A stretch of 64,000 nt of DNA, from NCBI RefSeq assembly GCF_035594765.1, contig NC_085846.1, positions 11,457,190 through 11,521,189 on the forward strand, read 5' to 3'. Below, in pieces: positions 3,693-26,579 of this stretch. The number at the start of each line of letters is the position of its first letter. The first letter of the stretch is position 1. Origin of the DNA: Anolis carolinensis (lineage: Eukaryota). Below the pieces are notes generated by a model. It saw only the letters and a list, made by a program, of their open reading frames with translations. It made no database searches and was not told where the DNA came from. Made by a program: the position numbers and the translations under genes.

Positions 3693-4136
3693 TCACGCTG
3701 TGGTCACAATCTGGCTTTCGTCATAGTGAACAGGCCAGCCTTCTTCGCAGCCAATGACGATGTACCGAGGAGAGGTGTTCTCTTTGTACTCACAAGGCGG
3801 GTGAGTCGAACCTCCCCGGAGGGTGCAAGTGGTGACCCGGAAGGGCCGCCAGCTACGCCGCAGGTCTCCCAAGGCCACCCCACCATCTGCACACACTGCA
3901 CGAATCTGCCTTTTGGAGCCATGAATAAAGGTGTTGACTTCTTTGCATTCGGGCTTGGTCAGACCTCGGCTGCCCATGAGGGTGTTGCAGTAGCGGCCAT
4001 GGAAACTGCTCCTCGGATCATCGCGGTGTTGATTCAGGAACTTCTCATAGCGAGGGTTGTTTCCTGACAGTGAACCAGGCAGCAACTCGGCCACAAGCAG
4101 GATGAGGAGAAGATAGCAGAAGATCTCAGACTTCAT
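3693..4136 (-). CDS. RNase A-superfamily secreted ribonuclease, canonical 6-Cys non-mammalian/angiogenin-like type (gene 1), 147 aa, single coding exon
   Basis: ATG at 4136 lies 12 nt after a pyrimidine-rich splice acceptor (ttttccttatAG at 4150-4149). Hydrophobic signal peptide MKSEIFCYLLLILLVAELLPGSLS. FLNQH (His12), CKEVNTFIH (Lys41 signature CKxxNTF), PVHYD (His119/Asp121) and six conserved Cys. Confidence 0.95.
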   Translation of the reverse strand: MKSEIFCYLLLILLVAELLPGSLSGNNPRYEKFLNQHRDDPRSSFHGRYCNTLMGSRGLTKPECKEVNTFIHGSKRQIRAVCADGGVALGDLRRSWRPFRVTTCTLRGGSTHPPCEYKENTSPRYIVIGCEEGWPVHYDESQIVTTA

Positions 4137-5990: not shown

Positions 5991-8243
5991 TTTGAGGCTA
6001 TTGAACCAATTGAAAGTCAGTAAAAAGTTTCATCATGGATCACTGGGCAGAAATCCCTGGATCGTCCCACATAGTTTCCCCAAAAAGCTGCATCTCTCAT
6101 TCCCTTGTAGAAAGAAGGCTGGGTTTTTTTTTTTGGTTTTTTTTTTTGTTTTTTGGAAATGTTAGACAAGTTAGCTTTGGGCAACTGCACCTTCAGAGTC
6201 TCCTGGCCAGAATGAAAAGTTGTTCTTTTTTCCTGGTTGGAGTATTCTGAAAGAAGCAGCCCCTAAAAGTAACTTTTCTTGGTTTCATGTTTTACCCAAC
6301 AGCAATAACAAAATATAATTAAAACAACCCTCCCTCCCTCCATTCCTAACTCTTTCCCTTACACATCAAAATAAATTCCAGAATGTACTCTGCTCTCTGA
6401 AGCAACATTCTGAAACCTTGATTGTTTTCCACATCTTCTGCCAGAAAACATCTGTTTTCTCCATTGATCTTTTTGGTTCACATGGGGCTGGAGGCATATT
6501 CTTTCCACGAATGTCAAAAAAACATGATTTTTAAGAACAATTTTTAATATGAACTGACATGTAAAAATTCTATATGAATCTTTAGGTCTTCCAGTCTCAC
6601 TCTGTGGTCCACTTCCACTGGATGACAACCACAGAATTGTGTTGAGGATCTACAAATACCTAGAGAGGTAATCTCTCTAAGACTCTCCAGTTTGTTTGTT
6701 TTTTTGTGTCAGGAGTGACTTGAATAGTCAAAGCCGCAAAAGTGAAATCCACAAATATGGAGGACTGACTGCAATTTATTTGGGATTTTGATTATTTTTA
6801 ATGAGAGTGTAATGAATTTGCATTGCAAAGGGAATGTTATTAGTGGGAATAACAGTCATTTTAGGTGTAACAAGTAACTGTAACTATTGCCAAAGGGCTT
6901 GTCTACACTGATGAAAAAAAAGATCTGTTTTGCATTGCATTTTTCCATTCCATAGTTACTTTGTTAATGCCACACATCGTGGTGAGATCAAAATTACCAA
7001 TGTAAGGGAATGGTCCACATCTCCAACCCGTCACATTATTGCTGAAGTCCAAAATAAATGGAAAACAAAAATTTGAAAACTCTAGCTTCTTGGAATTTTG
7101 CAGGGACATTTTTAAGTCATCTTATTTACTGATCTATTTTTTAAAATGTGATTTGTATTCTCATTTGTCAGCCATTTGAAATTTAATACCCTATTCATTC
7201 AGTTCTAAGGCGCCATCAATTGTAAAACACACACTAATTTCAGTACAATCACCACCAACAAAAGGCTTTATTTATATATGAGAAGCTGATCTGCAATTTT
7301 AAGATGCATCCCATTTTATGTGGAGGGGAATGCTTCTTAAATTTCAAAAAATAGGGTAATTAAAATGGTGGTGTGTATACAAAATAAATAAGAGAGAAAG
7401 GCCTCTAACTCTCTGTTCACATCTGTGCGGTGGCCCTGGTGAATCCTGTCCTCTTACAAGATATGGGTCTTGTCCTTCAACTATCTCACATGTATCTTTG
7501 AGGGAACCTGGCCTCACCACATGTCTGTCTCAATTGAAGTCTGCTGGTGGTTTAGCTGCCCAAATTGGTGAGCATTGCAATACTATGGAAGAACCAAGGC
7601 AGCCTAGTAGGAGAACCAAAGGAATTGGGACATCTCCTAGCATTGTTTTAAAAAGTTTCTTCCAACAAAATGTTCAGTCTACTAGAGAACAATAATATAA
7701 TTAGTAAAACACTAATTGTATCATGTTCAGGAGCATAAGCTTGGATTAGGTTCCTACTGGTAGTATTTTGACCCAAATACAACAAACTAGCCAACCAGTC
7801 TGAACATCCAACCAATTAAAGTGTGCAAAGTCTTCTTCTGATGGTACTTCTCATTCAAAAATGCTCGAGGTAAAGAAATTCAGCTGGGAAACTAAACAGA
7901 GATGAAAGAAATCAGAAGGGATGAAGCTAATTCGTATCTACATATCAAACCCATAGATAAAACAAAGAAGTAAGCGGGACGCTGGGCTTTCCCATTTTGC
8001 TACCATAAATTTAGCAACCCAACCAGACTGGACATGGTTTGCAATGGATTCTACTTGTTTCCATGTTGATGAGGAAGTGAATGAGCCTTGCTGCTCAAAC
8101 ATAGAATTATAGAGTTGTAAGAGACCACACGACCCATCCAGTCCAATTCTTGGCATGCAGGGAAATCTACTCAACACTTTGGGTAGCTTTTATAAAGTTC
8201 AGAGTAAAACCCAGTGTAGTAGTACTACTCCATAGACTTCCAA

Positions 8244-8420
8244 GACCCCATCCACATTTCCATATAATGCAGTTTGAGTTGGATTATATGGGTCAGTGTA
8301 GACTCATATAATGCCAATTAAACTGCATTGAACTGGATTATGTGAGTCTACACTGCCATATAATCCAATGCAGTTAATCTGCACTCTGAAACTGTATTAT
8401 ATAGCACTGTAGATGCAGCC
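8244..8420. mobile_element. PIF/Harbinger-like palindromic MITE
   Basis: Internal inverted atataatgcagt/actggattatat units, an end at gtagatgcagcc, and caa flanks. Confidence 0.45.
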
Positions 8421-8472
8421 CAAGACACTCAGTCCTGTACACATCCCTAGTTGCTGGAGATCTTAAACATTA

Positions 8473-8767
8473 AAAGGTACAGGTAAAGGTTTCCCCCTGA
8501 CATTAAGTCTAGTTGTGTCCGATTCTGGGGGTTGGTGCTCATCTCCATTTCTAAGACGAAGAGCCGGCGTTGTCCGTAGACACCTCCAAGGTCATGTGGC
8601 TGGAGAAGTACCTATTGATCTACTCAACATTTGTATGTTTTCGAACTGCTAGGTTGGCAGAAGCTGGGGCTAACAGTGAGAGCTCACCCTGCTCCTCGGA
8701 TTCGAACCATCGACTGTTCATTCAGCAAACTCAGCAGCTCAGCAGTTTAATTCGCTGTGCCACTGGG
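8473..8767 (-). mobile_element. Sauria SINE
   Basis: aaggtaaaggtttcccctgac... tail and body identical in type to the other copies. Confidence 0.8.
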
Positions 8768-9460
8768 TTACATTTCTTTAAAAGCAGTATAGGCCTGGGG
8801 AGTCTGAATCAGATGTTGACATAGGAATGGTTATTCCTTTTCCTATTGAGATATTTAAAAATACAGTATGACCCCCCTTATACACAAATTTTATGTCCAT
8901 AGTTTCCTTCATACACCTCCCTCCAAAATATATCTTTCCCCAAAAGTGTTTGTGGGCCTCTCTGTGTGTGTAGAATTAATGCAATTTGACACCACGTTAA
9001 CTGCCATGGCTCAATGCTATGGAAACTATGGGAGATGTGGTTTTACAATGTCTTTAGCCTTCTCTGCCAAAGAGTACTATTGTCTCATCAAACTATAAAT
9101 TCCTGGATTCTATAGCCTTGCAGGGTAACAGTTGGAAGTGCTCTCAAACTTCATTATACACCGGAGACACAACCTGGGAGAGAGCAAAGGTAAAAAGTTA
9201 TTCGAATGAAAGATTTTGACTGAAGCTAACATTTCTCAAAAATGGCATGGTGGTCTTTCTTGCAATCCCTAGAAGGAGAGGTTGAAAACTTTATTCATTT
9301 TCATGAATGCTTTTTGTATTTTAAAATTGCCCACCTAGTAGCAGATCAACAGCTCCCACCAGAAAGTTACAACATGAAGGGTTGCTGAATTGAGGAAGAC
9401 TTGGGAAGTCTAGAAGTTCTTCATAGAACCACAGGCTCACCACTGTTCCCAGGCAAGTAG

Positions 9461-9592
9461 TATATAAGAGGAATCCTGGAAGAAGGAAATGTGGTCCATC
9501 TCTGGTCTTCAGATCTGTCAGAAGAAGGAGCCAGTCTTCTTGAAGTGAGACACAAGGAACGAACATCTTTTAAACCAAAATTTTGGGTGAGT
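9461..9592 (+). promoter_or_regulatory. TATA box, non-coding exon 1 and splice donor of gene 2
   Basis: TATATAA at 9461 and GG|GTGAGT donor at 9587. The block is conserved in the duplicate at 15549-15680 and fits the usual RNase A layout of a non-coding exon plus one coding exon. Confidence 0.7.
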
Positions 9593-10105
9593 TGAACATG
9601 ATGGACCATGTCCAGTTTCTATATAAACTACCCTAAAAGGAAAGTAGGGAATATGGGAATGGGTTAAACATTTGGGTATCTAGTGTTACCAGTTATCAAG
9701 ACGACGCAACCTATGCCAGCCCCATGAATTAGAGACCACCAAGATCCCATTTCCTCAACAACTCTGTTCAAGTCTTGTAAACTCTTCTTTGATTGAATTT
9801 ATCCATCTGTATGCATATCTCTTTCCCTACTGCCTTCTACCTTAGTAAAGCATGGCTATGTTTCCTAGTGAGCCATGCCTTCTCAGGATATGTCCCAAGA
9901 GCCGTGGTGGTGAAATGGGTTAACTCTTCTGTGCCGCAAGCATTGCAAACAGTCAAAAGGAGAGTAGATTTTCCTGTACAGCTTTTTGTAGCCATTGGGA
10001 AAAAGTCAGAATTGGTGGGTCTGGAGCAGGGATTGAAATAATATTCAAATTATACTCGTGTTTCTTGCCTTTTCAGTTATGCATCCAGCAGCCAAGGGTC
10101 CAGTC

Positions 10106-10519
10106 ATGTCCCTCAAGGTGTGCCTTCTCCTCGCCTTCCTCATGGCCACCACTCTATTCCCAGGGAGCAAAGGCACTCCCTACAGCGACTTCCTGAAAAG
10201 AAATCTGGACAACCCTAAGTCTGACTACCGGAACGATGAGACTTACTGTGACCAGATGATGCGTCGCCGGAACCTGAATTGCCAGCGGGACAACACCTTC
10301 ATCCATACCGTTGAACAACATCTGATTTCCATCTGCAGTTGCAGAGGGGAAGTCCTGAATGGGAAGCAGACCAGCAAAACCCTCTTCCCCATCACAGTCT
10401 GCACCCTGAAGAAGGGCCCTAGAGAGCAGTCCTGTAGTTACAAGGGGGAGATTAAAATCAGGAAGATCCAGGTTGCCTGCCAGAAGGGCCTGCCTGTCAA
10501 ATATATTGCTCATATTTAA
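10106..10519 (+). CDS. Non-canonical RNase A-superfamily protein (gene 2), 137 aa, all three catalytic residues substituted
   Basis: Acceptor tttcttgccttttcAG at 10075-10076. Signal peptide MSLKVCLLLAFLMATTLFPGSKG. RNase scaffold (FLKR-LDNPKS, YCDQMM, C-x3-NTFIH, ITVC, C-x-YK, VAC, LPV), but His12->Asn, Lys41->Gln, His119->Lys. The in-frame ATG at 10079 is an alternative start that the paralogue lacks. Confidence 0.92.
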   Translation: MSLKVCLLLAFLMATTLFPGSKGTPYSDFLKRNLDNPKSDYRNDETYCDQMMRRRNLNCQRDNTFIHTVEQHLISICSCRGEVLNGKQTSKTLFPITVCTLKKGPREQSCSYKGEIKIRKIQVACQKGLPVKYIAHI

Positions 10520-10814
10520 GCCTAGAAGGAAATATAGTTCTGGAAGAGAGGGGGCTGATGATATGACCCCACCTTCCCATCACTTTCTAAAGCTCCTTTG
10601 GCTCCTTTTGCTTCTATAGAACTAGTTGCAATTCTGTGCCCAGCTCGAAATGTAACTTCAGTGGCTTATGATGTTTCTCACCTGATTTATGTCTATGTAG
10701 CACATTGCAGAATGCAGATGCTAAATTAATATTAAAACGGCAGTAATGGTTGTTTCTTGCAAGTACATGTCTGTCAAAGCCACTACACAGTTTTTAAGTC
10801 AGTTTCTGTAAAAC

Positions 10815-10820
10815 AATAAA
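10815..10820 (+). terminator. Polyadenylation signal of gene 2
   Basis: AATAAA about 300 nt after the stop, followed by a T/GT-rich tract. Conserved in the paralogue at 17774-17779. Confidence 0.7.
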
Positions 10821-11526
10821 CTTGACTACTAATAACCTGCTTTTTCATTTTTCTTTGTGCTCTTTTGCCATTGCGTCCTCTGTACGCAGTAAGGTGTGTT
10901 CTTCTCTCTCTAAGGGATGAGAGAAATAATGAAAAATGGTCAAACAGCTTGTTTTCCACACATTAAGAAATCCTGATACAAATTTTGGACCAATGGGAAT
11001 ATTCCCAGTTCAGGACTTGTTCTGCACAAAGTTTGCACATGGTTGGATTACGCAGCAAACAGCAATTTCTAAACAAGAAACAGCTCTCTCTACACAAAAA
11101 ATATATATTTCTGTATAAAGTATTTTATGCACAAAAAAGGAGGAAGGAAGAGGGGAAAAACAAATGTGACAGCACCCTTAATACTACTGTAACTGGTTTT
11201 TAATTTTCAAATGAACATTTGTGGATATAAACCTACTCTTCCATTTGGAACCCATGAAAAGGGCTTCTATCTATGAAGGGTCACAAACAATTAGAACCAA
11301 TTTCTGAGTAAAGCTGAGTGATACTCCAGAATTTGTGGAAAACTGGAGAATCATTTTTGATGGATTTTTTTTGTATTTTTAAAATTGGGTTGTATAAGTA
11401 GAGTATAACTGTCTCCATTATATTACAGCAGTATTAAAGAAAAAAAAATCAATGCATATATGTAAAGGAGATTACATTCCTTTCTGATACAGTTCAATTT
11501 CTACTCCTATCTAATTCCATTTAATG

Positions 11527-11855
11527 AAACCCCTGGTGGTACAGTGAGTTAAACCACTGAGCTGCTGAACTTGTTGACCGAAAGGTTGTAAGTTCAAATC
11601 TGAGGAGCGGGGTGAGCTCCCAATGTTAGCCCCAGCTTCTGCAAACCTAGCAGTTCGAAAACATGCAAATGCAAGTAGATGAATAGGTACCGCTCTGGTG
11701 GGAAGGTAACAGCACTCCATGCAGTCATACTGGCCATATGACCTTGGAGGTGTCTACTGACAATGCCAGCTCTTCGGCTTAGAAATGGAGATGAGCACCA
11801 ACCCCCAGTCGGACACAACTAGAATTAATGTCAGGGTAAAACCTTTACCTTTACT
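11527..11855 (+). mobile_element. Sauria SINE, full length
   Basis: tRNA head, body and acctttacct tail. TSD about taattccat. Confidence 0.85.
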
Positions 11856-12851
11856 TAATTCCATCTTAGTCTCCTACTTATACCTTTCTCCTTATTTCCT
11901 GCCTGTCTACCTATTCCTCTCCACCCCACCACCTTCCGGGAACATTTGTGATTCAATTTTGGATTTTTCAATTAGAATAGAATACAGAATAAAATCCAGA
12001 ATCTGAAAACTGGAGGATCTCATGGCTTTGAGGCAGTTTGGATAGCAGTACTGGGTCTGATTTAGCCTGGTCCACTGTCTGGACTGTACAGTGATAACAA
12101 CATCCTTTCCTTGTGACCATCATCATAAGGAAAGTGGATGGGTTATGCCCATGTCACCATTCCTAGTGAGCTACATTTCTCCATCCAAACCCCTTGCTGT
12201 CATGGGTGGCTCTACTGACTTCGGAACAGGGTGCCCAAACTGGACTCAATAAGCTGCAGAGACTGGAGTTTCATGCACACACTTGAGAGTATCTCTGACT
12301 TTGCCTAAAATGGGGCAAAGCTGGTTCAAATCCACAAAATCTTGGAATAAACTCCACTGTGTTTATGCCACTGTGCATCATGAAAACTGCCAGCAATCCA
12401 TTTGGAGTGAATATAGGTTTCCTTCAGCCTCTGGTGCCCTACATCCAGATCATCACAGATGTGTGTTCCCCATGACACTATTGACACTCCATACTGTCCA
12501 CATGTATTCCTGAATCTAGTAGATTCCAGATATTCTGCATATGAAATCATGGAAATCAATGCTAAGAAGAGAACTTGCTGTGGACATGAGTTCTTAGAGA
12601 AGCCTCAAAATTCCTAATGGTTTATTATTGGTAAATTGCTTTTCCCAAACTAGGTTCACTTCAGCCCTAAGTAATACAAGTAATGAGGACAACCAACAAA
12701 CTTCAGTCCCTTCAGTCTGTAACACAAGCACAGTCCATCAAAGTTACAACTTAGCTGCCGCATCATGACAAGATCATTAGATAGTGCAGGCATCTTAGCA
12801 GTATCATTACTTTTATACCCTTTTCTCTTGAAAGCCAGCTGTTTCTACTTA

Positions 12852-13196
12852 GACTGGAACTACACTGCCCTATATGCCAGGATCTGATCTCAGATTATCT
12901 GGCAGTGTAGAGTTAGGACCTTCCAGACAGGCCCTATATCCCAGGATCTGATCCCAGGTTTTCTGCTTCAAACTGGATTGTATGAGTCTGCACTGCCAGA
13001 TAATCTGGGATAAACAGAAAATCTGGGATCATATCCTGGGATACAGAGCCTGTCTGAAAGGGCCCTCATATAATCCAGTTCAAAGCAGATAATCTGGAAT
13101 CAGATCCTGGGATGTAAGGACACTGTAGAAGGAGCCTCATATAATAAGGTTCAAAGAAGATAATCTGAGATCAGATCCTGGAATATAGATCCGGCC
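12852..13196. mobile_element. PIF/Harbinger-like MITE built from inverted ccaggatctgatcccagattatctg repeats
   Basis: Termini GACTGGAACTACAC ... ATAGATCCGGCC with tta/tca flanks. Absent from the paralogous site near 19995. Confidence 0.55.
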
Positions 13197-13559
13197 TCAT
13201 TCTGCCTTGACCCTAACTTGTTGTTGAGTCCTGCCAATGTTGAGCTTGGTCCTTGTACCTGTACCTGTTTCCACACAATCCGCCTATGAACCCTCCTGTC
13301 TCTGCTTTCCAATATTTCCCTCCTGTCTCATACCTTCCTACCCATTCTGTTCTAGAAGCTATGTTTCCAATCCTTTTGCTCCTGTGTCTTGTTAATTCCA
13401 AACCACTAATTTAGATAAACATGTTCTATATTATGAACATCCAAAATGCTGGAAGGTACTGCTATTTTTATTTGATACTAGGTGAGACAAAAATAGTTTT
13501 TTTTCTGCTGGGGTTTAGTGTCCAGGACCAATGGTGGTCCAAACTATATGACTGCTCAG

Positions 13560-13706
13560 TAAAAGGTAAAGGTTTCCCCTGACGTTAAGTCCAGTCATAT
13601 CTGACTCTGGGAGTTGGTGCTGATCTCCATTTCTAAGCCGAAGAGCTGGCGTTGTCCATGGACACCTCCAAGGTCATGTGGCTGGCATGACTGCATGGAA
13701 CGCCAT
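13560..13706 (-). mobile_element. Sauria SINE, 5'-truncated
   Basis: Tail plus body. TSD gactgctca (13550/13711). Confidence 0.8.
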
Positions 13707-14054
13707 TATGGACTGCTCAAGTCCTATTATATTCTATGAGGTAGCAAAATAATGTGCTTTGATTGTGTGCTCCTGCCTGGCAGAGGATTGGACTGGATGG
13801 TTCTTGTGGTCTCTTCTAACTCTTTTATTCTATGATTTTATGTCCCTTATCTAGAACCAAGGTTTGTGTTTTTGGGATATTTCAAAGCCATGGATTGTTG
13901 AATTCATACACAACCAATGGATATAGAGGACTGATTGTAAATGTCTACTTAGGCTTTGTTTTGTTTGGGATACAAGAGGCCTGAAAGGAAGCAGAACCCT
14001 TAACAGGAAGAACAATATAGACCAGACATTGTGTTGATATTCCTTCTGGCTTGG

Positions 14055-14594
14055 TCATGGCATGGTCAGGATCTGGCTTTCATCATAGTGAATGCAGCCA
14101 ATAATGATGTACCAAGGAGAGCTGTTTTCTTTGTACAGTAGAGTCTCACTTATTCAACTTAAACAGGCCGGCAGAATGTTGGATAAGCGAATATGTTGGA
14201 TAATTAGGAGGGATTAAGGAAAAGCCTATTAAATATCAAATTAGGTTATGATTTTACAAATTAAGTACCAAAACATCATGTTATACAACAAATTTGACAG
14301 AAAAAGTAGTTCAATACGCAGTAATGCTATGTAGTAATTACTGTATTTACGAATTTAGCACCAAAATATCACGATGTATTGAAAACATTGACTACAAAAA
14401 TGTGTTGGATAATCCAGAACGTTGGATAAGTGGGTGTTGGATAAGTGAGACTCTACTGTACTTGCAAGGCAGGCGAGTTGAACCCTCCTGCCTTGTAGGT
14501 AGTGACCCAGAAGGGTCTCCAGCTATGCCACAGGTCTTCCAAGGCCACTCAGCCTTCAGCATACACTGCCTGGAGCTGCCTTTTGGAACCATGG
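14055..14594 (-). pseudogene. RNase A pseudogene, duplicate of gene 1 (3' half only)
   Basis: Aligns to 3693-3925. Carries a deletion of about 15 nt removing residues before HYDESQI, a frameshift of about 2 nt before STRLPCKY, and a Tigger-like MITE inserted at 14136-14458. The 5' half, intron and promoter (equivalent to about 3925-6960) are absent. Confidence 0.9.
14136..14458. mobile_element. Tigger/pogo-like (Tc1/mariner superfamily) MITE, 323 bp
   Basis: TIR CAGTAGAGTCTCACTTAT / ATAAGTGAGACTCTACTG with TA TSD. Interrupts the gene-1 pseudogene. Confidence 0.88.
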
Positions 14595-15533
14595 CTTTGA
14601 ACTGCATTATATGTCTACACTGCTATATAATTAGGTTCAAAGCAAATAATCTGGATTTTATATGGCAGTGTGGAAGGGGCCCCAGTCTGCAGTGCTACAC
14701 GCATCATAGTGAGATCAAGATAACCCTCCACACATCTCCCACATGAGACCTCACTTTGGCGCAATGGGATGGTCCATGTCTCCAATCCATCCCATTATCA
14801 CTGAAGTTTGAAACACCCGGAAGACCAAAGTTTGGAAACACTGGCTTATAAGAATTTTATAGGGACATTTTTCAATTGCCCTATTTACTGATCTTTTTAA
14901 TAAAAAGGTTGTTAAGCTTTTTAATGTGATTTTTATTCTCATTTGTTAAATGAATAGAAAGAAAGACAGAAAAGGCCTCTGGTCTCATCTGTAAACCATC
15001 CAGTTGAATGCTGCCCTATTGTAAGATAGTTTCCATTCTCTCATGCTGTTGTAATGTATCTATGAAGGAACATGGCCTCTCCACAGGTCTGTCTCAACTG
15101 AAGTCGGTTGGTGGTTTGGCTGTCCAAACAGGTGAGGATTACAACACTATTGAAGGAAGTAGGGCAGCCTTGCCTGGTTGCCCAAGATGAAAGAACAAAA
15201 AAAATTGAGACATCTCCTGATATCTTTTCAAAATTTCTTCCAAAAAATGTTCAGTCTATCAGAGAACAACCACATAAGCTGAAAAACCCCCTCTAATTTT
15301 CTTTTATGTTCGAGAGCATGTGCCTTGATTAGCTTTCAACAGTTGGTATTTTGACACAAACAAGGCAAACCATATTCATTTCATGAAGCTCATTTTTAAT
15401 TTTAAAACTGCCCAGTTATTAACATGATATAGCTCAGTAACCCTAACCAGAAAGTTACCACATGAAAAGTTACTAAATTGAGGAAGATACAGTAAGGCTG
15501 AAAGTTCTTCATACAGCCACAGGCTCACCGCTG

Positions 15534-15680
15534 TTCCCAGGAAAGTGGTATATAATAGGAACCCTGGAAGAAGGAAACTAGGTCCTTTTCTGGGTCTTCG
15601 GCTCTGTCAGCAGAAAGAGCCAGTCTTCCTGAAGGAATCCAGAAGGAAAGGATTTTTTAAACCAAAAAGTTGGGTGAGTT
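15534..15680 (+). promoter_or_regulatory. TATA box, non-coding exon 1 and splice donor of gene 3
   Basis: TATATAAT at about 15549, GG|GTGAGT at about 15675 and TTCCCAGGAA at 15534-15543. Paralogous to 9461-9592. Confidence 0.7.
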
Positions 15681-17040
15681 GAGAAGCATGGGCCATGTCC
15701 AGTTTCTACATAAACTACTATAAAAGGAAGTTAATGTGTATGATAGTGGAATGAGTGTAGCTTTTGGGTACTTGTTGTTAACTGTCATAATCAACTCCAC
15801 AGTCCCCATGAATTAGAGACCTCCAAGATAGCCTATGCTCAACAGCCCTGCTCAGGTCTTGAAAACACTTTTTTGATTGAATCTATCCAACTATAATGCA
15901 GTTTTCCTCTTTCCCTGCTGCCTTCTAATTTAGCCAGCATAACTCGTCTTTTCTAGTGAGTTATGCTTTCTCGTGATATTTTCAAAGTATGACAATTTAA
16001 GTTATCTTGGTTTCTAAAGGCTTGATTTGCTGTACATACCATTTATTTTTTCAGTCCTCGTTTAGAAATATGTATCTACTAGCAGCCAGAATCCCTCAAC
16101 CAGGTATATAGGGATTAAAAATCAAACATTTATGGATAATGATTTAGTTTTGCAAGGATGGCTAAAAAGGCTGATTTTCCTCTTTATGAAGTACAGTTGA
16201 TGCATTTTCTTCAGTGATCACTGTAAACACTGTTTTTTTTTTGTTGCTAACAGATTTGTTTAAGTGTCTAGGTGGCTTTCAGAAATCTTTAACTGTTGGT
16301 AGTTTTTTCACATTGAGCTAGAGGACTCCATTTGGGGCCAGAACCCATAGTTTAAGAAGCACTGCTATAGAATGATGGGATTTGTAGTTTATGAAATATT
16401 TGGAATTTTCTGCTTGTCAGCTCAAGGCAAGCAATCATTGCCTTGAACTACAGCGGCAAACTTTAAGTGCCTCAGCAATCTACAAATCTCAGGACATTCT
16501 AGGGGAAAATTAATTTCTTGAGTCTACTTTGCCTATTATGAGCAATCAAAAAGAGGATAGATTTTCATGTAGTGTTTACTTTTTTCATCTAGTTTGGTGT
16601 AGCCATTATGGTTCTGGGGTAGAAGTGAATAGAATATTCAGATAGCGTATTAAAATGTGTTGGGAAAGTTTGATAAAGGAGATCCTGGATTAAGACTATT
16701 CTATTATGTTCCAGAGTTATTTTATCCATTCTTTCTTCTCCTCTCCATTTCATCATTGCATCAGACCTATGAGGCAGGACATGCACAGTCAGAGCAAGAG
16801 GGGGATTTCACCCAGGGGCTTCATTGCATATAACCTGGATCTCTTAGGTTGAACTCCAATTTTCTAACACAACATGCCCGGAAAGTTCCATGGTTTCTCC
16901 AATTCCGATTTTACTCCACTGCTTTAACCACTGCTTTCATGGCTCAATAGATACTAGAACCTATGTTTCTCAAATGTTCTCACTACAACCTCAATTTTTT
17001 TGTCTTTTCAGGTACACATCCAGCACCCAAGGAATCAGTC

Positions 17041-17454
17041 ATGTCTTTCAAGGTGTGTCTTCTCCTTTCCTTCCTCGTGGCCACTGCTCTGTTCCAAGGA
17101 AGTGAAGGCACATCCTACAGCGACTTCTTGAAAAGGCACCTGGACAACCCGAAGTCTGACTATCAGAATGACGAGACTTATTGCAACCTGATGATGAGTC
17201 GCAGGAACCTGAACTGCCAGCAGGGCAACACTTTCATCCATGCTATTGAACAGCAGCTGGTTGACATCTGCAATTCCACAGGGAAAGTCCTGGATGGGAA
17301 CCAGACCAGCAAAACCCTTTTCCCCATCACAGTCTGCACCCTGCAGAATGGCTCCAACAAGCTCTCCTGCAAGTACAAAGGGGAGACAAAAATCAAGAAG
17401 ATTCGGGTTACCTGCCAGAAAGGCCTCCCTGTTCATTATATTGCCCATACCTAA
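17041..17454 (+). CDS. Non-canonical RNase A-superfamily protein (gene 3), 137 aa, paralogue of gene 2, Lys41->Gln
   Basis: Acceptor ttttttgtcttttcAG just upstream (about 17010). Signal peptide, FLKRH (His12 kept), CQQGNTFIH (Lys41 lost), PVHYI (His119 kept, Asp121 lost). Colinear with gene 2 with no indels. Confidence 0.92.
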   Translation: MSFKVCLLLSFLVATALFQGSEGTSYSDFLKRHLDNPKSDYQNDETYCNLMMSRRNLNCQQGNTFIHAIEQQLVDICNSTGKVLDGNQTSKTLFPITVCTLQNGSNKLSCKYKGETKIKKIRVTCQKGLPVHYIAHT

Positions 17455-17773
17455 GTGTGGAGGGAAAGGAAATGTGGAGCTGGAAGAGATAGGGCTTATG
17501 ATGTGATCCCACCTTCTCAACAGCTCTTTTGCAAAGCACCTCTTACTCATACAGAGCTCATTATAATTCTGTGCCTAGTAGCAACTGGTCTCCTTAGCTT
17601 GAAATCTAATTTTGGTGACTGATGATGTTTCATTTCTGATTTAAGTCTATGCAGCACATTGCCAAATGTTGATTTTAAATTAGTGTTAAAACAGCAATAA
17701 TAATTGTTTATTTGAATACAAGAATATACCTTTCAAAGTGAGTTTGCAGTTTCCTGGCCAGTTTCTGTAATAC

Positions 17774-17779
17774 AATAAA
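17774..17779 (+). terminator. Polyadenylation signal of gene 3
   Basis: AATAAA followed by a GT-rich tract, at the position paralogous to 10815. Confidence 0.7.
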
Positions 17780-18198
17780 CAAAAACTATTACCAATCTAC
17801 TTCATTGTTGTTTCCTGTGTTCTTCTGTCTCCATGTGTTTTTTATGTAACATGGTACACTCTGCTCTCACCTAAAAATTGAAATAACATTTGAAAATATT
17901 TGAAAAATAGTAAAAAAAAAACACACACACACACATGTTTTCGCATAATAAGAATCTTAATGAGAAGAATTCTGGACTAAGGAGAATCTTCACGCAATTT
18001 GCACAACATTAGCACATGCATGTTTTGCACAGAAAGCAGCATTTTTTGCACAAAAACAGCTTTTTCTACAAAAGAAAATTAATGACTATATAAAGTATTT
18101 CACGCATAAAAAAGGAGGAAGGAAGGGGAGGAAACAAGTAATGTGCCATGACCTTTATATAGGGTTGGGGTTTTTTTTGCATGTGCTTTCATGGATAT

Positions 18199-18541
18199 GG
18201 GGCCCCTGGTGGCACAGTGTGTTAAAAGCACTGAGCTGCTGAACTTGCGGACCAAAAGGTCCCAGGTTCAAATCCCGGGAGCAGAATGAGCACCCGCTGT
18301 TAGCCCCAGCTCCTGCCAACCTAGCAGTTCGAAAATATGCAAATCTGAGTAGATTAATAGGTACCGCTCTGGTGGGAAGGTAACGGCGCTCCATGCAGTC
18401 ATGCCAGCCACATGACCTTGGACAATGCCGACTCTTCGGTTTAGAAATGGAGATGAGCACCAACCCCCAGAGTCGGTCACGATTGGACTTAATGTCAGGG
18501 GAAACCTTTATCTTTCTTTTACCTTTCTTTACCTTTCTTTC
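18199..18541 (+). mobile_element. Sauria SINE, full length
   Basis: tRNA head and tail. TSD ttcatggatat (18188/18542). Confidence 0.85.
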
Positions 18542-18798
18542 TTCATGGATATAAACCCACTCTTCTATCTGATACTACTTCAAAAGAAAAGATTTTACAT
18601 CCATGAAATGCCATAAGAAAATAAAAAGCAGTCTTTGGGCAAAAGTCAGGGAATACTTTGGAGACCGCAGAAAATTCTGGAGTATCCCACAGCTTTGGGA
18701 CTGTCTGGACAGTGGGCTCCAGATCTGATTTGGCCTTATCCACTGTCTAGCCTGGACATATCTCTTTCCTTGCATTCATCATTAGCACAAGGATAGAT

Positions 18799-18932
18799 AA
18801 GTAGTTCTCAACCTGTGGGTCCCCAGATGTTTTGGCCTTCAACTTCTAGAAATCCTAACAGCTGGCAAACTGGCTGGGGTTTTTGGGAGTTGTAGGCAAA
18901 ACACCTGGTGACCCACAGGTTGAGAGCCACTG
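18799..18932. mobile_element. hAT MITE (palindromic)
   Basis: TIR xAGTxGTTCTCAACCTG / CAGGTTGAGAGCCACTG and 8-bp TSD ggatagat. Confidence 0.85.
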
Positions 18933-19269
18933 GGATAGATTGTGCCTGTGTAGCTGCTGCCACATTTCCTAGCCAACTATAGAGCACCACCTGAGCTCCT
19001 GGACCTTGTAGGCACCTCTGGTGATATATGAGAATGGGGCACCCAAATTGGACCAATCCAACTGTCTAGAATGCCCAAAATTTCAAGCAAACCCCAGAGT
19101 ATCTCCTAACTTTGGTTGAAATTGTGCAAAGCTGGTTTAAAGTCACAAAACCTTGAGATACTCACTAGAAGCTGCTGTGTGTTCCACATGACACTAGTGA
19201 CTACCGACACTTCGTACTATCCCCATTCCGTCCTGAATCTAGTACCATCCAGATATTTTGTATATGAAA

Positions 19270-19455
19270 TTATAGATTCATAGAGCTGGAAGAGACCAGA
19301 AGAGATATCTAGTCCAATCCCATTCTCCATGCAGGAACACAGAATGAAAACACCCCCAACAAATGTCCACCCAACCTCTGCCTTAAAATCTCCAAAGGAG
19401 ACTCCACCATGTTCCAAGACAACTTATTCCACTGCAAAGAGCTCTTACCATCAAA
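19270..19455 (-). mobile_element. CR1 LINE 3' fragment
   Basis: catagagctggaagagacc...ctagtccaatccc, a typical CR1 3' end. Similar short fragments lie at about 8100-8175, 13760-13835, 42240-42350 and 45860-45910. Confidence 0.6.
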
Positions 19456-20015
19456 GCTCAGAAGACTGGATTTTGTATTGCGCTGTTTACTTTTGTTTGT
19501 TTGTAGATTTGTTGGTTTGTTTTCTGGAAAAATTAACTAATTAAAAGAAAAGTATTTGCTTTCTCAGACAAACCTCAAAATACGTACCTGAAAGCACAGC
19601 TCACTCCTAATTTATCAGAAATAAATTATCCTTTCCCCAATTCTTCTCTTCCTATTTTGTCCCAGAAAAGAGAGCGGTAACTGCTCTCTTCCAGTCTTCG
19701 CAAGGAGAGAGATGTCAAAACCCCCAACCTGCATGTTGTGCACAAAACCATGGACCACTCTTGATAGTGAATTATATGGTTTGTTAGTGGTTTATCACTT
19801 TCCCCAGTCCGAGTTCACTTCAGCACTATGTAACACAACAAGAGAACCAACAGACTTCAGTCTATTTAATACAAGCTCAGCTCATCCGTTATAACTGAGC
19901 TGTTACAACAGGATGGCATCAGTAGATGGTGCTAGCATCTTAGAAATTCTATTGCTTCTTAATAGTCCTTTGCCTTGAAATGGAGTTGTATTTGCTCATT
20001 TTGCCTTGGCCCCAA

Positions 20016-20765
20016 GCCTTCCTAATGCCACTATCCCTTAATTCAGTTCCTCATGTTGTGGTGACCCCCAACCATAAAATTATTTTCGTTGCTACTTCAT
20101 AACTGTAATTTTGCTACTGTTATAAATCGTAATGTAAATATCCAATATGCAGGATGGATTTTCATTCATTCAACTAAATTTGACACGAATACCCAATATG
20201 CCCAAATTTGAATACTGGTGGGGTTGAGGGGGATTGATTTTGCCATTTGGGAATTGTAGTTGCTGGGATTTATTGTTCACATACAATCAAACAGCATTCT
20301 GAAATCCATCAACAATGGAATTGAACCAAACTTGGCACACAGACCTCCCATGACCAACAGAAAATATTAGAAGGGTTTGGTGGGCATTGACTTTGAGTTT
20401 GAGTTTTAGTTCACTTACATCCAGAGAGCACTGTGGACTCAAACAATAATGGATCTGGACCAAACTTGGCACAAATACTCAATATGCCCATATGTGAACA
20501 CTGGTGGAGTTTGGGGAAAATAGATTTTGACATTTGGGAGTTGTAGTTGCTGGGATTTACAGTTCACCGCCAATCAAAAAGCCCCTTGAACCCCACCAAC
20601 GATAGAATTAGGCCAAAGGACAGGTGGAGAGATCATCAGCCTTCTCTGCCAAAGGGGTCACCTAAGACCATCAGAAATATGTCTTTTCTGATGGTCTTTG
20701 GTGACTCCTCTGAAGCCCCTCGAGACCCCCCCCCAGGGGTCCCGACCCCCAGGTTGAGAAACACT
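20016..20765. mobile_element. SPIN/URR1-type non-autonomous hAT transposon
   Basis: cagttcctcatgttgtggtgacccccaaccataaaattattttcgttgctacttcataactgtaattttgctactg matches the URR1/SPIN subterminal sequence as I recall it. The right end is cccgacccccaggttgagaaacact. Confidence 0.75.
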
Positions 20766-23559: not shown

Positions 23560-26500
23560 TCAGTCAACGAAGGCCTTCTGGAATAGCCAAGTTTTCAGGC
23601 TCTTCCTGAAAGAAAGTAGGGTAGGGGCCTGCCTAATCTCCCTGGGGAGCGAGTTCCACAGCCGGGGGGCCACGGCGGAGAAGGCCCTCTCCCTCGTCCC
23701 CACCAACCGCAACTGCGAAGTTGGTGGAAGCGAGAGGAGGGCCTCCCCCGACGAGCGAAGAGGTCGTGCGGGTTCATAGGGGGAAATGCGGTCTCGAAGG
23801 TAGGTGGGTCCCAAACCGTTTAGGGCTTTGTAGGTGATAACCTGCACCTTGAATTGGGCTCGGAAAATAAATGGCAGCCAGTGGAGCTCTTTAAACAGCG
23901 GCGTTGAGCGCGCCCTGTAATCTGCCCCAGTTAGAAACCTGGCTGCCGATCGTTGTACTAGTTGTAGTTTCCGAGCCGTCTTCAAAGGCAGCCCCACGTA
24001 GAGCGCATTGCAGTAATCCAGTCTAGAGGTAACTAAGGCATGGACCACCATGGTCAGATCTGACTTCTCGAGGTATGGTCGCAGCTGGCGCACAAGTTTT
24101 AGTTGTGCAAAGGCCCTCCCAGCCACGGCCGACACCTGGGCCTCAAGTGTCAGCGCAGAGTCCAGGAGGACCCCCAAGCTGCGGACCTGCGCCTTCAGGG
24201 GGAGTACAACCCCGTCAAGCACAGGTTGCCACCCAATACCCCGATCAGACGTACGACTGACCTGGAGGACCTCTGTCTTGTCAGGATTGAGCTTCAGCTT
24301 GTTCGCCCTCATCCAGGCCAATACAGCGGCCAGACACTGGTCCAGTATCCGAGGGGCTTCCTTGGAATTAGGTGGAAAGGAGTAGTAGAGTTGGGTGTCA
24401 TCCGCGTAGAGATGGCATTGCACTCCAAAACTCTGGATGACCTCACCCAGCGGTTTCATGTAGATATTAAAAAGCATGGGGGACAAAATGGAACCTTGCG
24501 GGACCCCACAGGTCAAAGGCCAGGGGTCCGAGCAGGTGTCCCCCAGCTTCACCAACTGGGAACGGCCCTCTAGGAAGGACTGGAGCCACTGCAGAACAGT
24601 ACCCCCAAGGCCCATCCCGGAGAGACGTCCCAGAAGGATACCATGGTCGATGGTATCGAAAGCCGCTGAGATGTCCAAGAGAACCAGCAGGGTCACACCC
24701 CCCTGTCCAGCTCTCTGCGGAGGTCATCCACCAAGGCGACCAAAGCCGTCTCAGTACTGTAGCCAGGTCTGAAACCAGACTGTGATTGGTCCAGAAAATC
24801 CGTATCTTCCAAGAATCCCTGGAGCTGAGAGGCAACCACCCGCTCCAAGACCTTGCCCAAGAATGGAAGGTTAGAGATTGGTCTGTAGTTACTGAGGTTA
24901 GCCGGATCCAAGGAGGCTTTCTTCAAAACAGGCCTCACCACAGCTTGTTTTAGGCCAGATGGAAATATGCCCTGCTCCAAAGAGGCATTGATTATTCTCA
25001 CAAACCAATCAACTAGCCCTCCACTGGCTTGTTTTAAGAGCCAAGATGGGCAAGGGTCAAGGGCACAGGTGGTCGCCCTCACCGCTCCAAGAATCTTGTC
25101 CACATCATCAGGCTGCACAAGCCGAAACGAATCCCACAAGATCGAACAGACAGATGCCTCGGTTACCTCACCTGGCAATGCATCAGGGCCGGCGTCTAAG
25201 TCGGAACGAATCTGAGCGACTTTGTCTGCAAAATGGTGAGCGAACTCGCTACACCGAGTTGACGAGATGTCGGGTGCTCCCCCGACCTGAGGAGGGTGGA
25301 GGAGCTCCCCAACAACTCGAAACAACTCTGAAGATCTATTTGTTGCAGACGCGATGCGGGCAGTCGAGAAAACTTTCCTGGCTGCCTGCAATGCCGCGGA
25401 ATAGGCCCTAATAGCGGCTCTAGACCGTGCTCGGTCAGATACGTCACGAGTTGTCCGCCAGCGGCACTCTAGTCTCCTTCTTGCACGTTTCATCTCTGCC
25501 AGCTCCCCAGTAAACCAGGGAGCTGGGGCAACTCCACGCAGCGAGAGGGGACGCTCAGGAGCGATCGTGTCTATTGCCCTGGACAACTCGCCATTATAAC
25601 GAGTGACCAGGGCATTGACAGGATCGTCAGCTTCCATGGTAGACAGATCCCCAAGAGACCTCAGGAATCTCTCAGGATCCATAAGTCTCCTGGGGCGGAC
25701 CATCTTAATTGGTCCACCACCCCTGCGGAGGTTGGAAGAGACGGTTAGTCTTAAACTGATCAGATAGTGGTCGGACCATGACAATGGAAGAATAATTTGC
25801 TCTTCCACTCCGACCAAACCGTCGCCCGCAACAAAAACCAGGTCGAGTGTATGTCCAGCTTGATGAGTGGGACCCGATATTATTTGGGACAGACCCATGG
25901 TCGTCATGGCGGCCATGAATTCCTGAGCTGCACCTGTCAAGGTGGTCTCAGCGTGAATGTTGAAGTCGCCCAGCACCAACAGGCGCTGGGAACCCAACAC
26001 CACACTAGAAACCACCTCTGCTAGCTCAGGCAGGGAGACTGCTGTGTCGCGGGGTGGACGGTACACCAGCAGAATCCCCAAACTGTCCCGGGTACCCACC
26101 TTCAAGTGGAGACACTCAAACCCGACCGATTGCAAAGCCACGCATCTGACCAGGGCGATGGACTGCCTAAAGACCACCGCAACCCCACCTCCCCGCCCTC
26201 CTGGCCTGGCCTGCTGATGCACCCCGAAACCCGGAGGACAAAGCTGGGTAAGACTAACCCCACCCAGATCATCCAACCAGGTTTCGGTGATGCAGGCCAG
26301 ATCCGCATGTTCATCCATGATTAGATCCTGGATAATAGATGATTTACCTTTGACGGATCTGGCATTAAACAGCAGGACCTTCAGCCGGGAGGGGCTACCA
26401 TGGAGGCTACCACACCTATCCTTCTCCAGGGTCGCAAGAACCCTGTTGCGCTTCTCCCTGGAAATTCGTTGACAGCAATTCCCCCTCCTCCCCCACACGA

Positions 26501-26579
26501 CCTCGATGGAGCCACCCCCCGCCTGTTCCCCACCCTCCAAGGAGTCTGGCTCAATTGGAGCATCCTTAAGAGAATCTAG
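23560..26579 (-). CDS. L2 ORF2 (APE plus RT), split by a single 1-nt frameshift at about 24698-24703
   Basis: The frame is open from 26579, immediately after the ORF1 TGA, to 24693. RT continues in the adjacent frame (24696-23560). DRG-(S)-VTLLVLLD is broken inside a G6 run. Confidence 0.85.

What the first reader, a model, noticed from the sequence alone, without database searches (positions are those of the whole stretch)
10106..17454. Retained pair of catalytically defective secreted RNase A paralogues (lizard pseudo-RNases)
Seen: gene 2 has Asn/Gln/Lys at the His12/Lys41/His119 positions (KRNLD, CQRDNTF, PVKYI). Gene 3 has lost Lys41 and Asp121 (CQQGNTF, PVHYI). Both have a 3-residue shorter loop before Cys40 (RRNLNC vs RRGMTKPNC). 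Both keep the signal peptide, six core Cys, TATA/exon 1/donor, acceptor and AATAAA, with no indels. By hand I count 28 synonymous-only codon differences and 38 amino-acid differences over 137 codons, which suggests dN/dS below 1. There is an internal control: in the same duplication the canonical gene 1 copy decayed into a pseudogene, while both defective genes stayed intact. Established: the His-Lys-His triad is required for RNase A activity, and mammals have inactive RNases 9-13, several of them epididymal. Inference: this is a squamate lineage of secreted pseudo-enzymes with a non-catalytic role such as antimicrobial, reproductive or decoy function.
Basis: partly seen in the sequence, partly recalled or inferred. 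Interest (0 to 1): 0.82.

Follow-up and report, generated by a model that had tools for sequence, protein, structure and literature searches.

The report
Lysine-less secreted RNase-like genes of lizards
Two intact green-anole genes belong to a lizard-and-snake-wide branch of the RNase A family that swapped its catalytic lysine for glutamine roughly 190 million years ago and has still been kept by selection. One anole copy has since lost both catalytic histidines as well, so it is a preserved "dead enzyme".

Summary
Gene 2 (10106-10519) has Asn/Gln/Lys at His12/Lys41/His119. Gene 3 (17041-17454) has His/Gln/His and Ile at Asp121. They differ at 28 synonymous-only codons and 38 residues (dN/dS 0.28). 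The duplicated copy of canonical gene 1 (13912-14593) is a broken pseudogene.

The window is the Anolis carolinensis RNase A cluster. Both genes belong to a well-supported clade (95/90) found in geckos, skinks, lacertids, amphisbaenians, anguids, agamids, anoles and snakes. The clade has invariant Gln41, Arg11 and Ile121. His12 and His119 are kept in most lineages but lost in some duplicates.

Clade-wide omega is 0.18, and neutrality is rejected (p = 7e-68). A TATA box, a non-coding exon 1 and its splice donor are conserved from geckos to anoles.

The g2/g3 duplication predates the A. carolinensis/A. sagrei split. Gene 3 is the conservative copy. Gene 2 lost both histidines and the glycosylation site, yet its branch omega is 0.28 (omega = 1 rejected, p = 0.011).

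Gene 2 is therefore a retained pseudo-enzyme. Gene 3 is probably strongly impaired, because angiogenin K40Q is inactive, but this is not proven. The short loop is not a defect marker. Expression and function were not tested. I found no published description.

The parts
3693..4136 (-). Gene 1: canonical RNase A-family gene (His12/Lys41/His119, CKEVNTF, PVHYD). It lies head-to-head with gene 2 and is the parent of the decayed copy.
   Evidence: ORF. Pfam RnaseA E = 1.1e-30. The exact protein is annotated, with close relatives in A. sagrei, Sceloporus and Elgaria.
9461..9467 (+). Gene 2 TATA box (TATATAA)
   Evidence: The box is conserved in the gene 3 copy and upstream of most orthologues examined.
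9490..9586 (+). Gene 2 putative non-coding exon 1. The 5' end is approximate. It ends at the TTGG|GTGAGT donor.
   Evidence: Conserved block and donor. No transcript data were examined.
9587..10076 (+). Gene 2 putative intron (GT...TTTTCAG)
10106..10519 (+). Gene 2 coding sequence, 137 aa plus stop. An alternative in-frame ATG at 10079 gives the annotated 146-aa product. Residues are Asn12/Gln41/Lys119. The NQT sequon is lost and there is an extra Cys.
10815..10820 (+). Gene 2 AATAAA polyadenylation signal
   Evidence: It is conserved in position with the gene 3 signal.
13912..14593 (-). Pseudogene copy of gene 1. It matches gene 1 only from about residue 72 through the 3' UTR, has in-frame stop codons, and is split by a ~320-bp insertion (14137-14456).
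   Evidence: tblastn; blastn
15549..15555 (+). Gene 3 TATA box
15578..15673 (+). Gene 3 putative non-coding exon 1 (5' end approximate)
15674..17011 (+). Gene 3 putative intron. It is about 850 bp longer than the gene 2 intron because of insertions.
17041..17454 (+). Gene 3 coding sequence, 137 aa plus stop. Residues are His12/Gln41/His119 with Ile121. This is the conservative copy of the squamate Gln41 lineage.
17774..17779 (+). Gene 3 AATAAA polyadenylation signal

Best explanation
Genes 2 and 3 are the two green-anole members of a squamate-wide, non-canonical branch of the RNase A superfamily.

The branch arose at or before the base of crown Squamata. Since then it has carried Gln in place of the transition-state-stabilising Lys41, together with Arg11 and Ile121. 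It kept the signal peptide, three disulfides, the RNase A fold, a strongly cationic surface and, in most lineages, His12, His119, Asn44 and Thr45. Selection has preserved it (omega about 0.18), and it has its own conserved promoter and 5' exon.

In anoles a tandem duplication of the [gene 1 - Gln41 gene] unit predates the A. carolinensis/A. sagrei split.
- The extra gene 1 copy decayed.
- Gene 3 kept the ancestral sequence state.
- Gene 2 lost both histidines, the conserved N-glycosylation site and other conserved residues, and gained a free cysteine. It still evolves under purifying selection.

Inferred mechanism, not shown: the gene-3 type binds RNA, nucleotide or phosphate in a preserved cleft but turns over substrate at best very slowly. 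Gene 2 cannot cleave RNA at all and acts through its cationic surface, as a secreted binding or host-defence protein.
For: Identity and breadth:
- The exact gene 3 and gene 1 proteins are annotated in A. carolinensis.
- Clade members occur in more than 25 squamate species of all major groups.
- The clade is monophyletic at 95/90 support and roughly follows the species tree.
- Gln41 pairs with Arg11 in 35 sequences, and 33 sequences show His/Gln/His.

Constraint:
- ML omega is 0.18 with IQ-TREE. My own GY94 code reproduces the same lnL.
- omega = 1 is rejected (2dlnL = 303, p = 7e-68).
- Pairwise omega is 0.14-0.37 for all pairs except the three close lacertid pairs (0.49-0.59).
- The gene 2 branch has omega 0.28. 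This is not different from background (p = 0.26), and omega = 1 is rejected (p = 0.011).
- An ORF like this survives neutral substitutions at d = 0.26 per site in only 2.7% of simulations, before counting indels.

Transcription unit: the TATA box, exon 1 and GT donor are conserved 1.7-4.4 kb upstream of the coding exon in Rhineura, three lacertids, Hemicordylus and two geckos. Candoia keeps the donor but has TGTGTAA in place of the TATA box.

Fold: the AlphaFold2 model has pLDDT 93.5. Its TM-score is 0.85 to turtle RNase 2ZPO and about 0.8 to angiogenins.

Loss of catalysis: the same Lys-to-Gln change in human angiogenin (K40Q, PDB 1B1E) is reported as enzymatically inactive with an unchanged fold (PMC3288110, PMC3973227).

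Division of labour between the copies:
- Gene 2 changed 11 sites that are conserved in at least 8 of 10 non-anole orthologues. Gene 3 changed 2.
- Between the two anole species, gene 2 differs at 10 residues. Four of these are former active-site positions (12, 42, 43, 119). The other 6 of 133 are comparable to gene 1 (5 of 147) and gene 3 (4 of 137).
Against: - No transcript, protein or activity data were examined. Expression rests on conserved promoter and splice signals and on database gene models.
- The gene 3 branch alone is too short to reject omega = 1 (p = 0.34).
- The conserved His12, His119, Thr45 and Arg11 could mean that the gene-3 type is still a working enzyme, which would make 'pseudo-enzyme' wrong for it.
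- dS between distant squamates is partly saturated (values of 1-2.4).
- Codon data cover 12 sequences only. A. sagrei DNA could not be fetched.
- The biological role (host defence or binding) is inference from charge and family precedent only.
Confidence: 0.72

Rival explanations
1. The gene-3 type, including the single-copy squamate orthologues, is still a working ribonuclease with a rewired P1 site. Arg11, and in most species Arg42, supplies the positive charge that Lys41 gives in RNase A, while Gln41 donates a hydrogen bond. On this reading only gene 2 is a pseudo-enzyme.
For: - His12, His119, Asn44, Thr45 and Arg11 are kept in most lineages of the clade across roughly 190 My.
- Gln41 itself is invariant in those lineages rather than drifting. 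It does drift (Ala, Arg, Trp) in gecko paralogues that also lost His119.
- His119 is lost only in some lineages that have duplicates: Anolis gene 2, the Heteronotia copies and one Gekko copy.
- Low-activity RNases can still need catalysis, as angiogenin does.
Against: - Angiogenin K40Q is reported inactive.
- Arg11 also occurs together with Lys41 in a crocodile RNase, so it was not recruited as a replacement.
- Gene 3 and both A. sagrei copies have lost Arg42 (CQQGNTF).
- Asp121 is absent.
- No activity was measured.
Confidence: 0.2
2. Gene 2 is a pseudogene in slow decay. Its open frame is still intact by chance or is kept open by gene conversion from gene 3.
For: - Gene 2 evolves about 2.7 times faster than gene 3 at the protein level.
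- It has 11 changes at otherwise conserved sites, against 2 in gene 3.
- It lost both histidines and the NQT sequon and gained an odd cysteine.
- Its branch omega of 0.28 is nominally above the background of 0.175.
Against: - omega = 1 is rejected on its branch (p = 0.011).
- The frame, start, stop, promoter, splice sites and poly(A) signal are all intact.
- The A. sagrei orthologue is also intact and 93% identical. Its differences concentrate at the former active site.
- The ratio of terminal to stem branch length is the same as for gene 3 (about 22%), so there is no recent acceleration.
- dS of 0.52 between the copies rules out recent gene conversion.
- Neutral ORF survival is 0.3-3%, and the neighbouring gene-1 copy did decay.
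Confidence: 0.06

Closest known systems
[quoted passage not shown]
   Same: They are secreted RNase A-fold paralogues that sit in the RNase gene cluster. [quoted passage not shown]
   Different: - Independent origin. The 13 mammalian lineages arose within mammals (PMC3845642), whereas this clade contains only squamates and its nearest relatives are sauropsid RNases.
- The defining change here is a single fixed Lys41-to-Gln, with both histidines kept in most lineages. Full loss of the histidines is a secondary event in some duplicates.
- I had no named mammalian RNase 9-13 sequences in the tree, so non-orthology rests on the taxon make-up of the clade and on the literature.
Human angiogenin K40Q (engineered variant, PDB 1B1E)
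   Same: It carries the same substitution at the equivalent catalytic lysine, in the closest mammalian structural relatives of gene 3 (TM-score about 0.8). It is reported as enzymatically inactive, with an unchanged fold and some non-catalytic activities retained.
   Different: It is a laboratory mutant, not a natural lineage. It has Gln12 (the RNase A Gln11 position), whereas the squamate clade has Arg there. It also has a different C-terminus.
Green turtle egg-white ribonuclease (PDB 2ZPO) and other canonical sauropsid RNases (iguana, and the anole genes 1, 49k and 57k in this window)
   Same: 2ZPO is the closest solved structure by sequence (E = 2.6e-24) and by fold (TM-score 0.85). These proteins share six cysteines and the three-disulfide angiogenin-like architecture.
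   Different: They keep CKxxNTF and Gln11 and are active enzymes. The Gln41 clade is a separate, well-supported branch.

Membership tests
RNase A superfamily (Pfam PF00074) | Significant match to the family profile | tested here: met
   Gene 2: E = 2e-18, 67 bits. Gene 3: E = 4.9e-22, 79 bits. The curated cut-off is 23.1 bits.
RNase A superfamily (Pfam PF00074) | RNase A fold | tested here: met
   AlphaFold2 model of mature gene 3 has pLDDT 93.5. Foldseek TM-score is 0.85 to 2ZPO and about 0.8 to angiogenins. Gene 2 was not modelled; it is 72% identical to gene 3.
RNase A superfamily (Pfam PF00074) | Six core cysteines (three conserved disulfides) and an N-terminal secretion signal | tested here: met
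   The six Cys align with those of canonical RNases. A hydrophobic N-terminus of about 21-23 residues is read from the sequence. No signal-peptide predictor was available.
RNase A superfamily (Pfam PF00074) | Coding region in one exon, preceded by a non-coding 5' exon | tested here: inconclusive
   The coding region is an uninterrupted ORF. The TATA box, exon 1, donor and acceptor are conserved between the copies and across squamates. No transcripts were examined.
Canonical (catalytically competent) RNase A-type enzymes | Catalytic triad His12-Lys41-His119 | tested here: not met
   Gene 2 has Asn/Gln/Lys. Gene 3 has His/Gln/His.
Canonical (catalytically competent) RNase A-type enzymes | CKXXNTF signature motif | tested here: not met
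   Gene 2 has CQRDNTF and gene 3 has CQQGNTF. Most other clade members have CQR(G/S)NTF.
Canonical (catalytically competent) RNase A-type enzymes | Measurable ribonucleolytic activity | not testable with these tools
   This needs recombinant protein assays. The only proxy is the reported inactivity of angiogenin K40Q.
Mammalian non-canonical RNases 9-13 | Orthology to one of the mammalian RNase 9-13 lineages | tested here: inconclusive
   In trees of 88 and 52 family representatives, the clade groups only with sauropsid sequences from Alligator, Pelodiscus and Euleptes. Most representatives were unnamed, so mammalian RNases 9-13 could not be labelled. The literature places the origin of those lineages within mammals.
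Squamate Gln41 'ribonuclease-like' clade (defined here) | Membership of the monophyletic group, with Gln41, Arg11 and Ile121 | tested here: met
   Both genes lie inside the 95/90-supported clade. Gln60, Arg32 and Ile134 are invariant in alignment A3, which includes both genes.

The most novel reading that the evidence does not exclude
The gene-3 type is a roughly 190-million-year-old natural 'lysine-less' ribonuclease. It would still cleave a specific RNA using His12 and His119, with Arg11 and Gln41 replacing Lys41. That would be a rewired catalytic centre not yet described in the RNase A superfamily. The histidine-less duplicates (anole gene 2 and the gecko paralogues) would then have evolved repeatedly as non-cleaving binders or decoys of the same target.
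Probability: 0.15. Interest if true: 0.7.

Novelty: new variant of a known kind. Interest (0 to 1): 0.5.

Why it matters
Non-canonical, apparently inactive RNase A paralogues are so far discussed as a mammalian speciality (RNases 9-13). This finding shows an independent and much older case in lizards and snakes. One defined substitution (Lys41 to Gln) has been fixed for the whole history of the group. Further loss of catalytic residues has happened repeatedly in duplicates, in anole gene 2 and in gecko paralogues.

This gives a natural series for asking what an RNase A scaffold does without catalysis: a canonical neighbour, then the lysine-less form, then the histidine-less form. It also lets one ask whether Lys41 is truly indispensable. 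The genes are short, single-exon and easy to express, so the question can be tested directly.

The genes are already in databases under the automatic name 'ribonuclease-like'. The gain is therefore interpretation, not gene discovery.

Tried and rejected
- AlphaFold2 with the 13-sequence clade alignment gave an unusable model (pLDDT 46). Only the 132-sequence alignment worked.
- A. sagrei DNA for a direct orthologue dN/dS could not be fetched because no gene was on record. Only protein comparisons were possible.
- My first codon-model run failed numerically for the omega = 1 null. It was fixed and rerun with several starts.
- The gene 3 branch test is underpowered (omega = 1 not rejected, p = 0.34). 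I do not claim branch-specific constraint for gene 3 from codons. I rely instead on its 97% identity to A. sagrei and on the clade-wide omega.
- Tajima relative-rate tests of gene 2 against gene 3 were mostly non-significant (p = 0.03-0.24).
- Eight literature searches found no description of this clade and no expression data. Two of them were badly specified and returned noise. Lomax et al. 2014 (PMC4219644) is not held. The library lacks most subscription journals, so 'not described' is provisional.
- The search of earlier findings returned nothing on this locus.
- I rejected the shorter 36-39 loop and the missing Asp121 as markers of inactivation. Both are shared with Lys41-bearing crocodilian RNases.
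- I rejected a strict Gln11Arg/Lys41Gln 'swap', because Arg11 also occurs together with Lys41.
- I considered a wider sauropsid origin of the Lys41 loss. The nearest outsiders, Alligator (Arg41), Pelodiscus (Gln41/Gln119) and Euleptes (Thr41), join the clade at 93/91. They are long branches, so this is left open.
- No complex prediction was run, because no binding claim is made.


Full report
**What is in the window**

The 64-kb window has no N runs. It is a cluster of RNase A-family genes from the green anole, Anolis carolinensis. The gene 3 and gene 1 proteins match annotated A. carolinensis proteins exactly, on a 120-Mb contig. A tblastn of the three proteins against the window shows the following:
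- Gene 1: 3693-4136, minus strand, canonical.
- Gene 2: 10106-10519, plus strand.
- A broken copy of gene 1: about 13912-14593, minus strand.
- Gene 3: 17041-17454, plus strand.
- Two further canonical genes at 49135-49533 and 56914-57336, and a fragment at 53029-53223.

A self-comparison shows that 7490-11183 and 15054-18161 are duplicates at about 77-78% identity. The [gene 1 - gene 2] unit was therefore tandemly duplicated.

**Check of the observation**

- Gene 2 reads FLKRNLD / CQRDNTF / PVKYI. Gene 3 reads FLKRHLD / CQQGNTF / PVHYI.
- Both pass the Pfam RnaseA threshold easily.
- HMMER alignments to turtle RNase 2ZPO and to bovine RNase A chains place these residues on His12, Lys41, His119 and Asp121.
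- The two coding regions are 414 nt each with no indels. They differ at 76 nucleotides, giving 28 synonymous-only codons and 38 amino-acid differences, exactly as counted by hand. Nei-Gojobori gives dN 0.145, dS 0.521 and omega 0.28.
- The TATA box, a roughly 97-nt upstream exon ending in TTGG|GTGAGT, a TTTTCAG acceptor 30 nt upstream of the gene 2 or gene 3 ATG, and AATAAA about 300 nt past the stop are present and aligned in both copies.
- The gene-1 copy between them is dead. Only the part from about residue 72 onward is recognisable. It has in-frame stops and a ~320-bp insertion.

Minor additions: gene 2 has a seventh cysteine in the mature protein, and it has an in-frame ATG nine codons upstream (10079) that database models use.

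**The pair belongs to an old, squamate-wide clade**

Searches with gene 3 and with a clade profile returned 'ribonuclease-like' proteins only from squamates at strong scores:
- Amphisbaenian, skink, cordylid, anguid, agamid: Rhineura, Lerista, Hemicordylus, Elgaria, Pogona.
- Lacertids: Zootoca, Lacerta and three Podarcis species.
- Anoles: two species.
- Snakes: eleven species, from Python and Candoia to Naja and Crotalus.
- Geckos: seven species.

In an exhaustive profile search there is a clear score gap. Four cluster representatives score 142-241 bits (E < 1e-30), and everything else scores 116 bits or less.

All single-copy members have C-Q-x-x-N-T-F. Across the proteins fetched, 33 show His/Gln/His and 35 pair Arg11 with Gln41. 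Gln41, Arg11 and Ile121 are invariant in the 13-sequence alignment, which includes both anole genes.

A careful maximum-likelihood tree recovers the 25 sampled members as one group (ultrafast bootstrap 95, SH-aLRT 90, and 98% of bootstrap trees). Its internal order roughly follows squamate phylogeny, with geckos outside and then the remaining squamates, where snakes group with the cordylid and anoles with Pogona and Elgaria. Because geckos are included, the lineage is at least as old as crown Squamata, about 190 My according to the abstract of PMC12629976 listed.

The nearest outsiders are sauropsid proteins that also lack Lys41: Alligator (Arg), Pelodiscus (Gln, with Gln119) and Euleptes (Thr). 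That wider grouping has 93/91 support and involves long branches, so I leave open whether the lysine was lost even earlier.

**Selection**

I fetched the coding DNA of ten orthologues.
- Pairwise omega is 0.14-0.37 for all pairs except the three very close lacertid pairs (0.49-0.59, few changes).
- A GY94+F3X4 model gives a tree-wide omega of 0.18 in IQ-TREE. My own implementation reproduces the same likelihood (-3177.94) and rejects omega = 1 with 2dlnL = 303 (p = 7e-68).
- Gene 2 branch: omega 0.28 against a background of 0.175. The difference is not significant (p = 0.26), but omega = 1 is rejected (p = 0.011).
- Gene 3 branch: too short for a verdict (omega 0.41, omega = 1 not rejected, p = 0.34).
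- Under neutral substitution alone, an ORF like gene 3 keeps its start, frame and stop in 2.7% of simulations at d = 0.26 per site and in 0.3% at d = 0.45. The flanks of the two copies are also full of indels, while the coding regions have none.

**A conserved transcription unit**

The block holding the TATA box, exon 1 and the splice donor upstream of genes 2 and 3 is found again, in the same orientation, 1.7-4.4 kb upstream of the coding exon in eight loci. These are Rhineura, Zootoca, Lacerta, Podarcis, Hemicordylus, Candoia, Heteronotia and Eublepharis.

In the alignment, TATATAA, the GT of TTGGGTRAGT and an upstream CTTCTTCA...AACCACAGG element are conserved across most of these lineages; Candoia has TGTGTAA in place of the TATA box. 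Non-coding conservation over this time span indicates a working promoter and 5' exon. No RNA data were available to me, so expression remains inferred.

**Structure**

A shallow alignment gave a useless model. With 132 family sequences, the mature gene 3 protein folds with pLDDT 93.5. It matches turtle egg-white RNase 2ZPO (TM-score 0.85) and many angiogenin structures (TM-score about 0.8).

**How the two anole copies differ**

The duplication predates the A. carolinensis/A. sagrei split (support 100/98).
- Gene 3 is the conservative copy. It changed 2 sites that are conserved in at least 8 of 10 non-anole orthologues, whereas gene 2 changed 11. The gene 2 changes include His12Asn, His119Lys, the Asn of the conserved NQT glycosylation sequon, and Ser-to-Cys.
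- The gene 2 lineage is about 2.7 times longer than the gene 3 lineage, both before and after the species split. The terminal part is about 22% of the total in both, so there is no sign of a recent collapse of constraint.
- Between the two anoles, gene 2 differs at 10 residues. Four of them are former active-site positions: 12 (Asn/Tyr), 42 (Arg/Gln), 43 (Asp/Gly) and 119 (Lys/Gln). The other 6 of 133 are in line with gene 1 (5 of 147) and gene 3 (4 of 137).
- The Lys119 codon AAA is two steps from the His codon CAT of gene 3, via CAA (Gln), which is the residue A. sagrei has. This fits His119 having already been lost before the species split; this step is inference.

In short, in gene 2 the catalytic centre has been released while the rest of the protein is still held.

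**What this means for activity**

Gene 2 has neither the general base nor the general acid of the RNase A mechanism (established knowledge), so it cannot be a ribonuclease of this type.

For the gene-3 type the evidence cuts both ways.
- For strong impairment: the same Lys-to-Gln change in human angiogenin, K40Q, is described as enzymatically inactive with an unperturbed fold. It still translocates to the nucleolus and keeps a non-catalytic protective activity (PMC3288110, PMC3973227).
- For a retained cleft function: His12, His119, Asn44, Thr45, Arg11 and Gln41 itself are kept in most lineages of the clade. His119 and Gln41 are lost only in some lineages with extra copies, namely anole gene 2 and the Gekko and Heteronotia paralogues (Arg, Tyr, Gln or Lys at 119; Ala, Arg or Trp at 41).

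That pattern says the cleft is still used, for binding or for slow or rewired catalysis. I therefore rate 'retained, non-cleaving or barely cleaving binder' as most likely and 'rewired active enzyme' at about 0.2.

Both the 3-residue shorter loop and the absent Asp121 are shared with Lys41-bearing crocodile RNases and other sauropsid RNases.

**Likely role (inference only)**

The mature proteins are small and strongly cationic. The pI is 8.9-9.5 in anoles and up to 10.7 in geckos. Most are glycosylated at one conserved site. This is the profile of secreted host-defence or ligand-binding RNase relatives. Nothing here points to a tissue.

**Novelty**

The genes are already annotated automatically as 'ribonuclease-like'. 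In eight full-text searches I found no paper describing a squamate Lys41-less RNase lineage. Reviews treat non-canonical RNases as mammalian. The library lacks most subscription journals, so this is provisional.

I class the finding as a new variant of a known kind: an independent, older, sauropsid counterpart of mammalian RNases 9-13. It has a defined and conserved Lys-to-Gln state and shows repeated secondary histidine loss in duplicates.

- No contig looked human.
- The broken gene-1 copy was only described, not repaired.

Noticed in passing
window 49135-49533 (+), 56914-57336 (+), 53029-53223 (+): There are two more intact canonical RNase A genes (CKPVNSF / CKAVNSF, PVHYD / PVHLD) and one C-terminal fragment with no start. 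The window therefore holds most of an anole RNase cluster: five intact genes and two relics.
   Followed up: partly
window 23560-27578 (-): Long ORFs of 378, 615 and 332 aa lie in a GC-rich block (GC 0.49-0.55). The translations read like the reverse transcriptase, endonuclease and ORF1 of a non-LTR (LINE) retrotransposon that is nearly intact. No family search was run on them.
   Followed up: no
window 27966-28492: About 151-bp units are repeated in tandem at 95-97% identity, just beside the LINE-like element.
   Followed up: no
window 60001-64000: Strand composition is strongly skewed (AT skew 0.43-0.45, GC skew 0.27-0.29, GC down to 0.34). This is probably a purine-rich simple or satellite-like stretch.
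   Followed up: no
window ~9415-9440 and ~15500-15530; L001-L004, L007-L010 upstream blocks: A CTTCTTCA...AACCACAGG element about 45 bp upstream of the TATA box is conserved from geckos to anoles. AACCACA resembles a RUNX site from memory, which would hint at blood-cell expression. I did not test this.
   Followed up: no
L009 (Heteronotia binoei) 10001-10426 and 15748-16161; proteins P0023, P0025, P0026, P0045, P0046; Gekko P0021/P0024: Geckos expanded the same clade independently. All five Heteronotia copies have lost His119 (Arg or Tyr), and four of the five have lost Gln41 (Ala, Arg, Trp). Gekko japonicus keeps one His119 copy and one Arg119 copy.
   Followed up: partly
proteins P0196 (Pelodiscus), P0194 (Alligator), P0047 (Emydura), P0059 (Euleptes): Other sauropsid RNase-like proteins also lack Lys41 (Gln, Arg, Asn and Thr respectively). 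Three of them sit next to the squamate clade in the tree. Loss of the lysine may be recurrent in sauropsids, or older than squamates.
   Followed up: partly
L008 (Eublepharis) 17739-20429 (-): A vomeronasal-type-2-receptor-like gene (NCD3G + 7tm_3) lies directly beside the gecko RNase cluster.
   Followed up: no
L001, L003, L004, L008 position 1 to ~400-3300 (-): In several other squamates a canonical RNase gene lies head-to-head upstream of the Gln41 gene, as gene 1 does in the anole. The pairing of a canonical and a lysine-less gene is therefore an old syntenic unit.
   Followed up: partly
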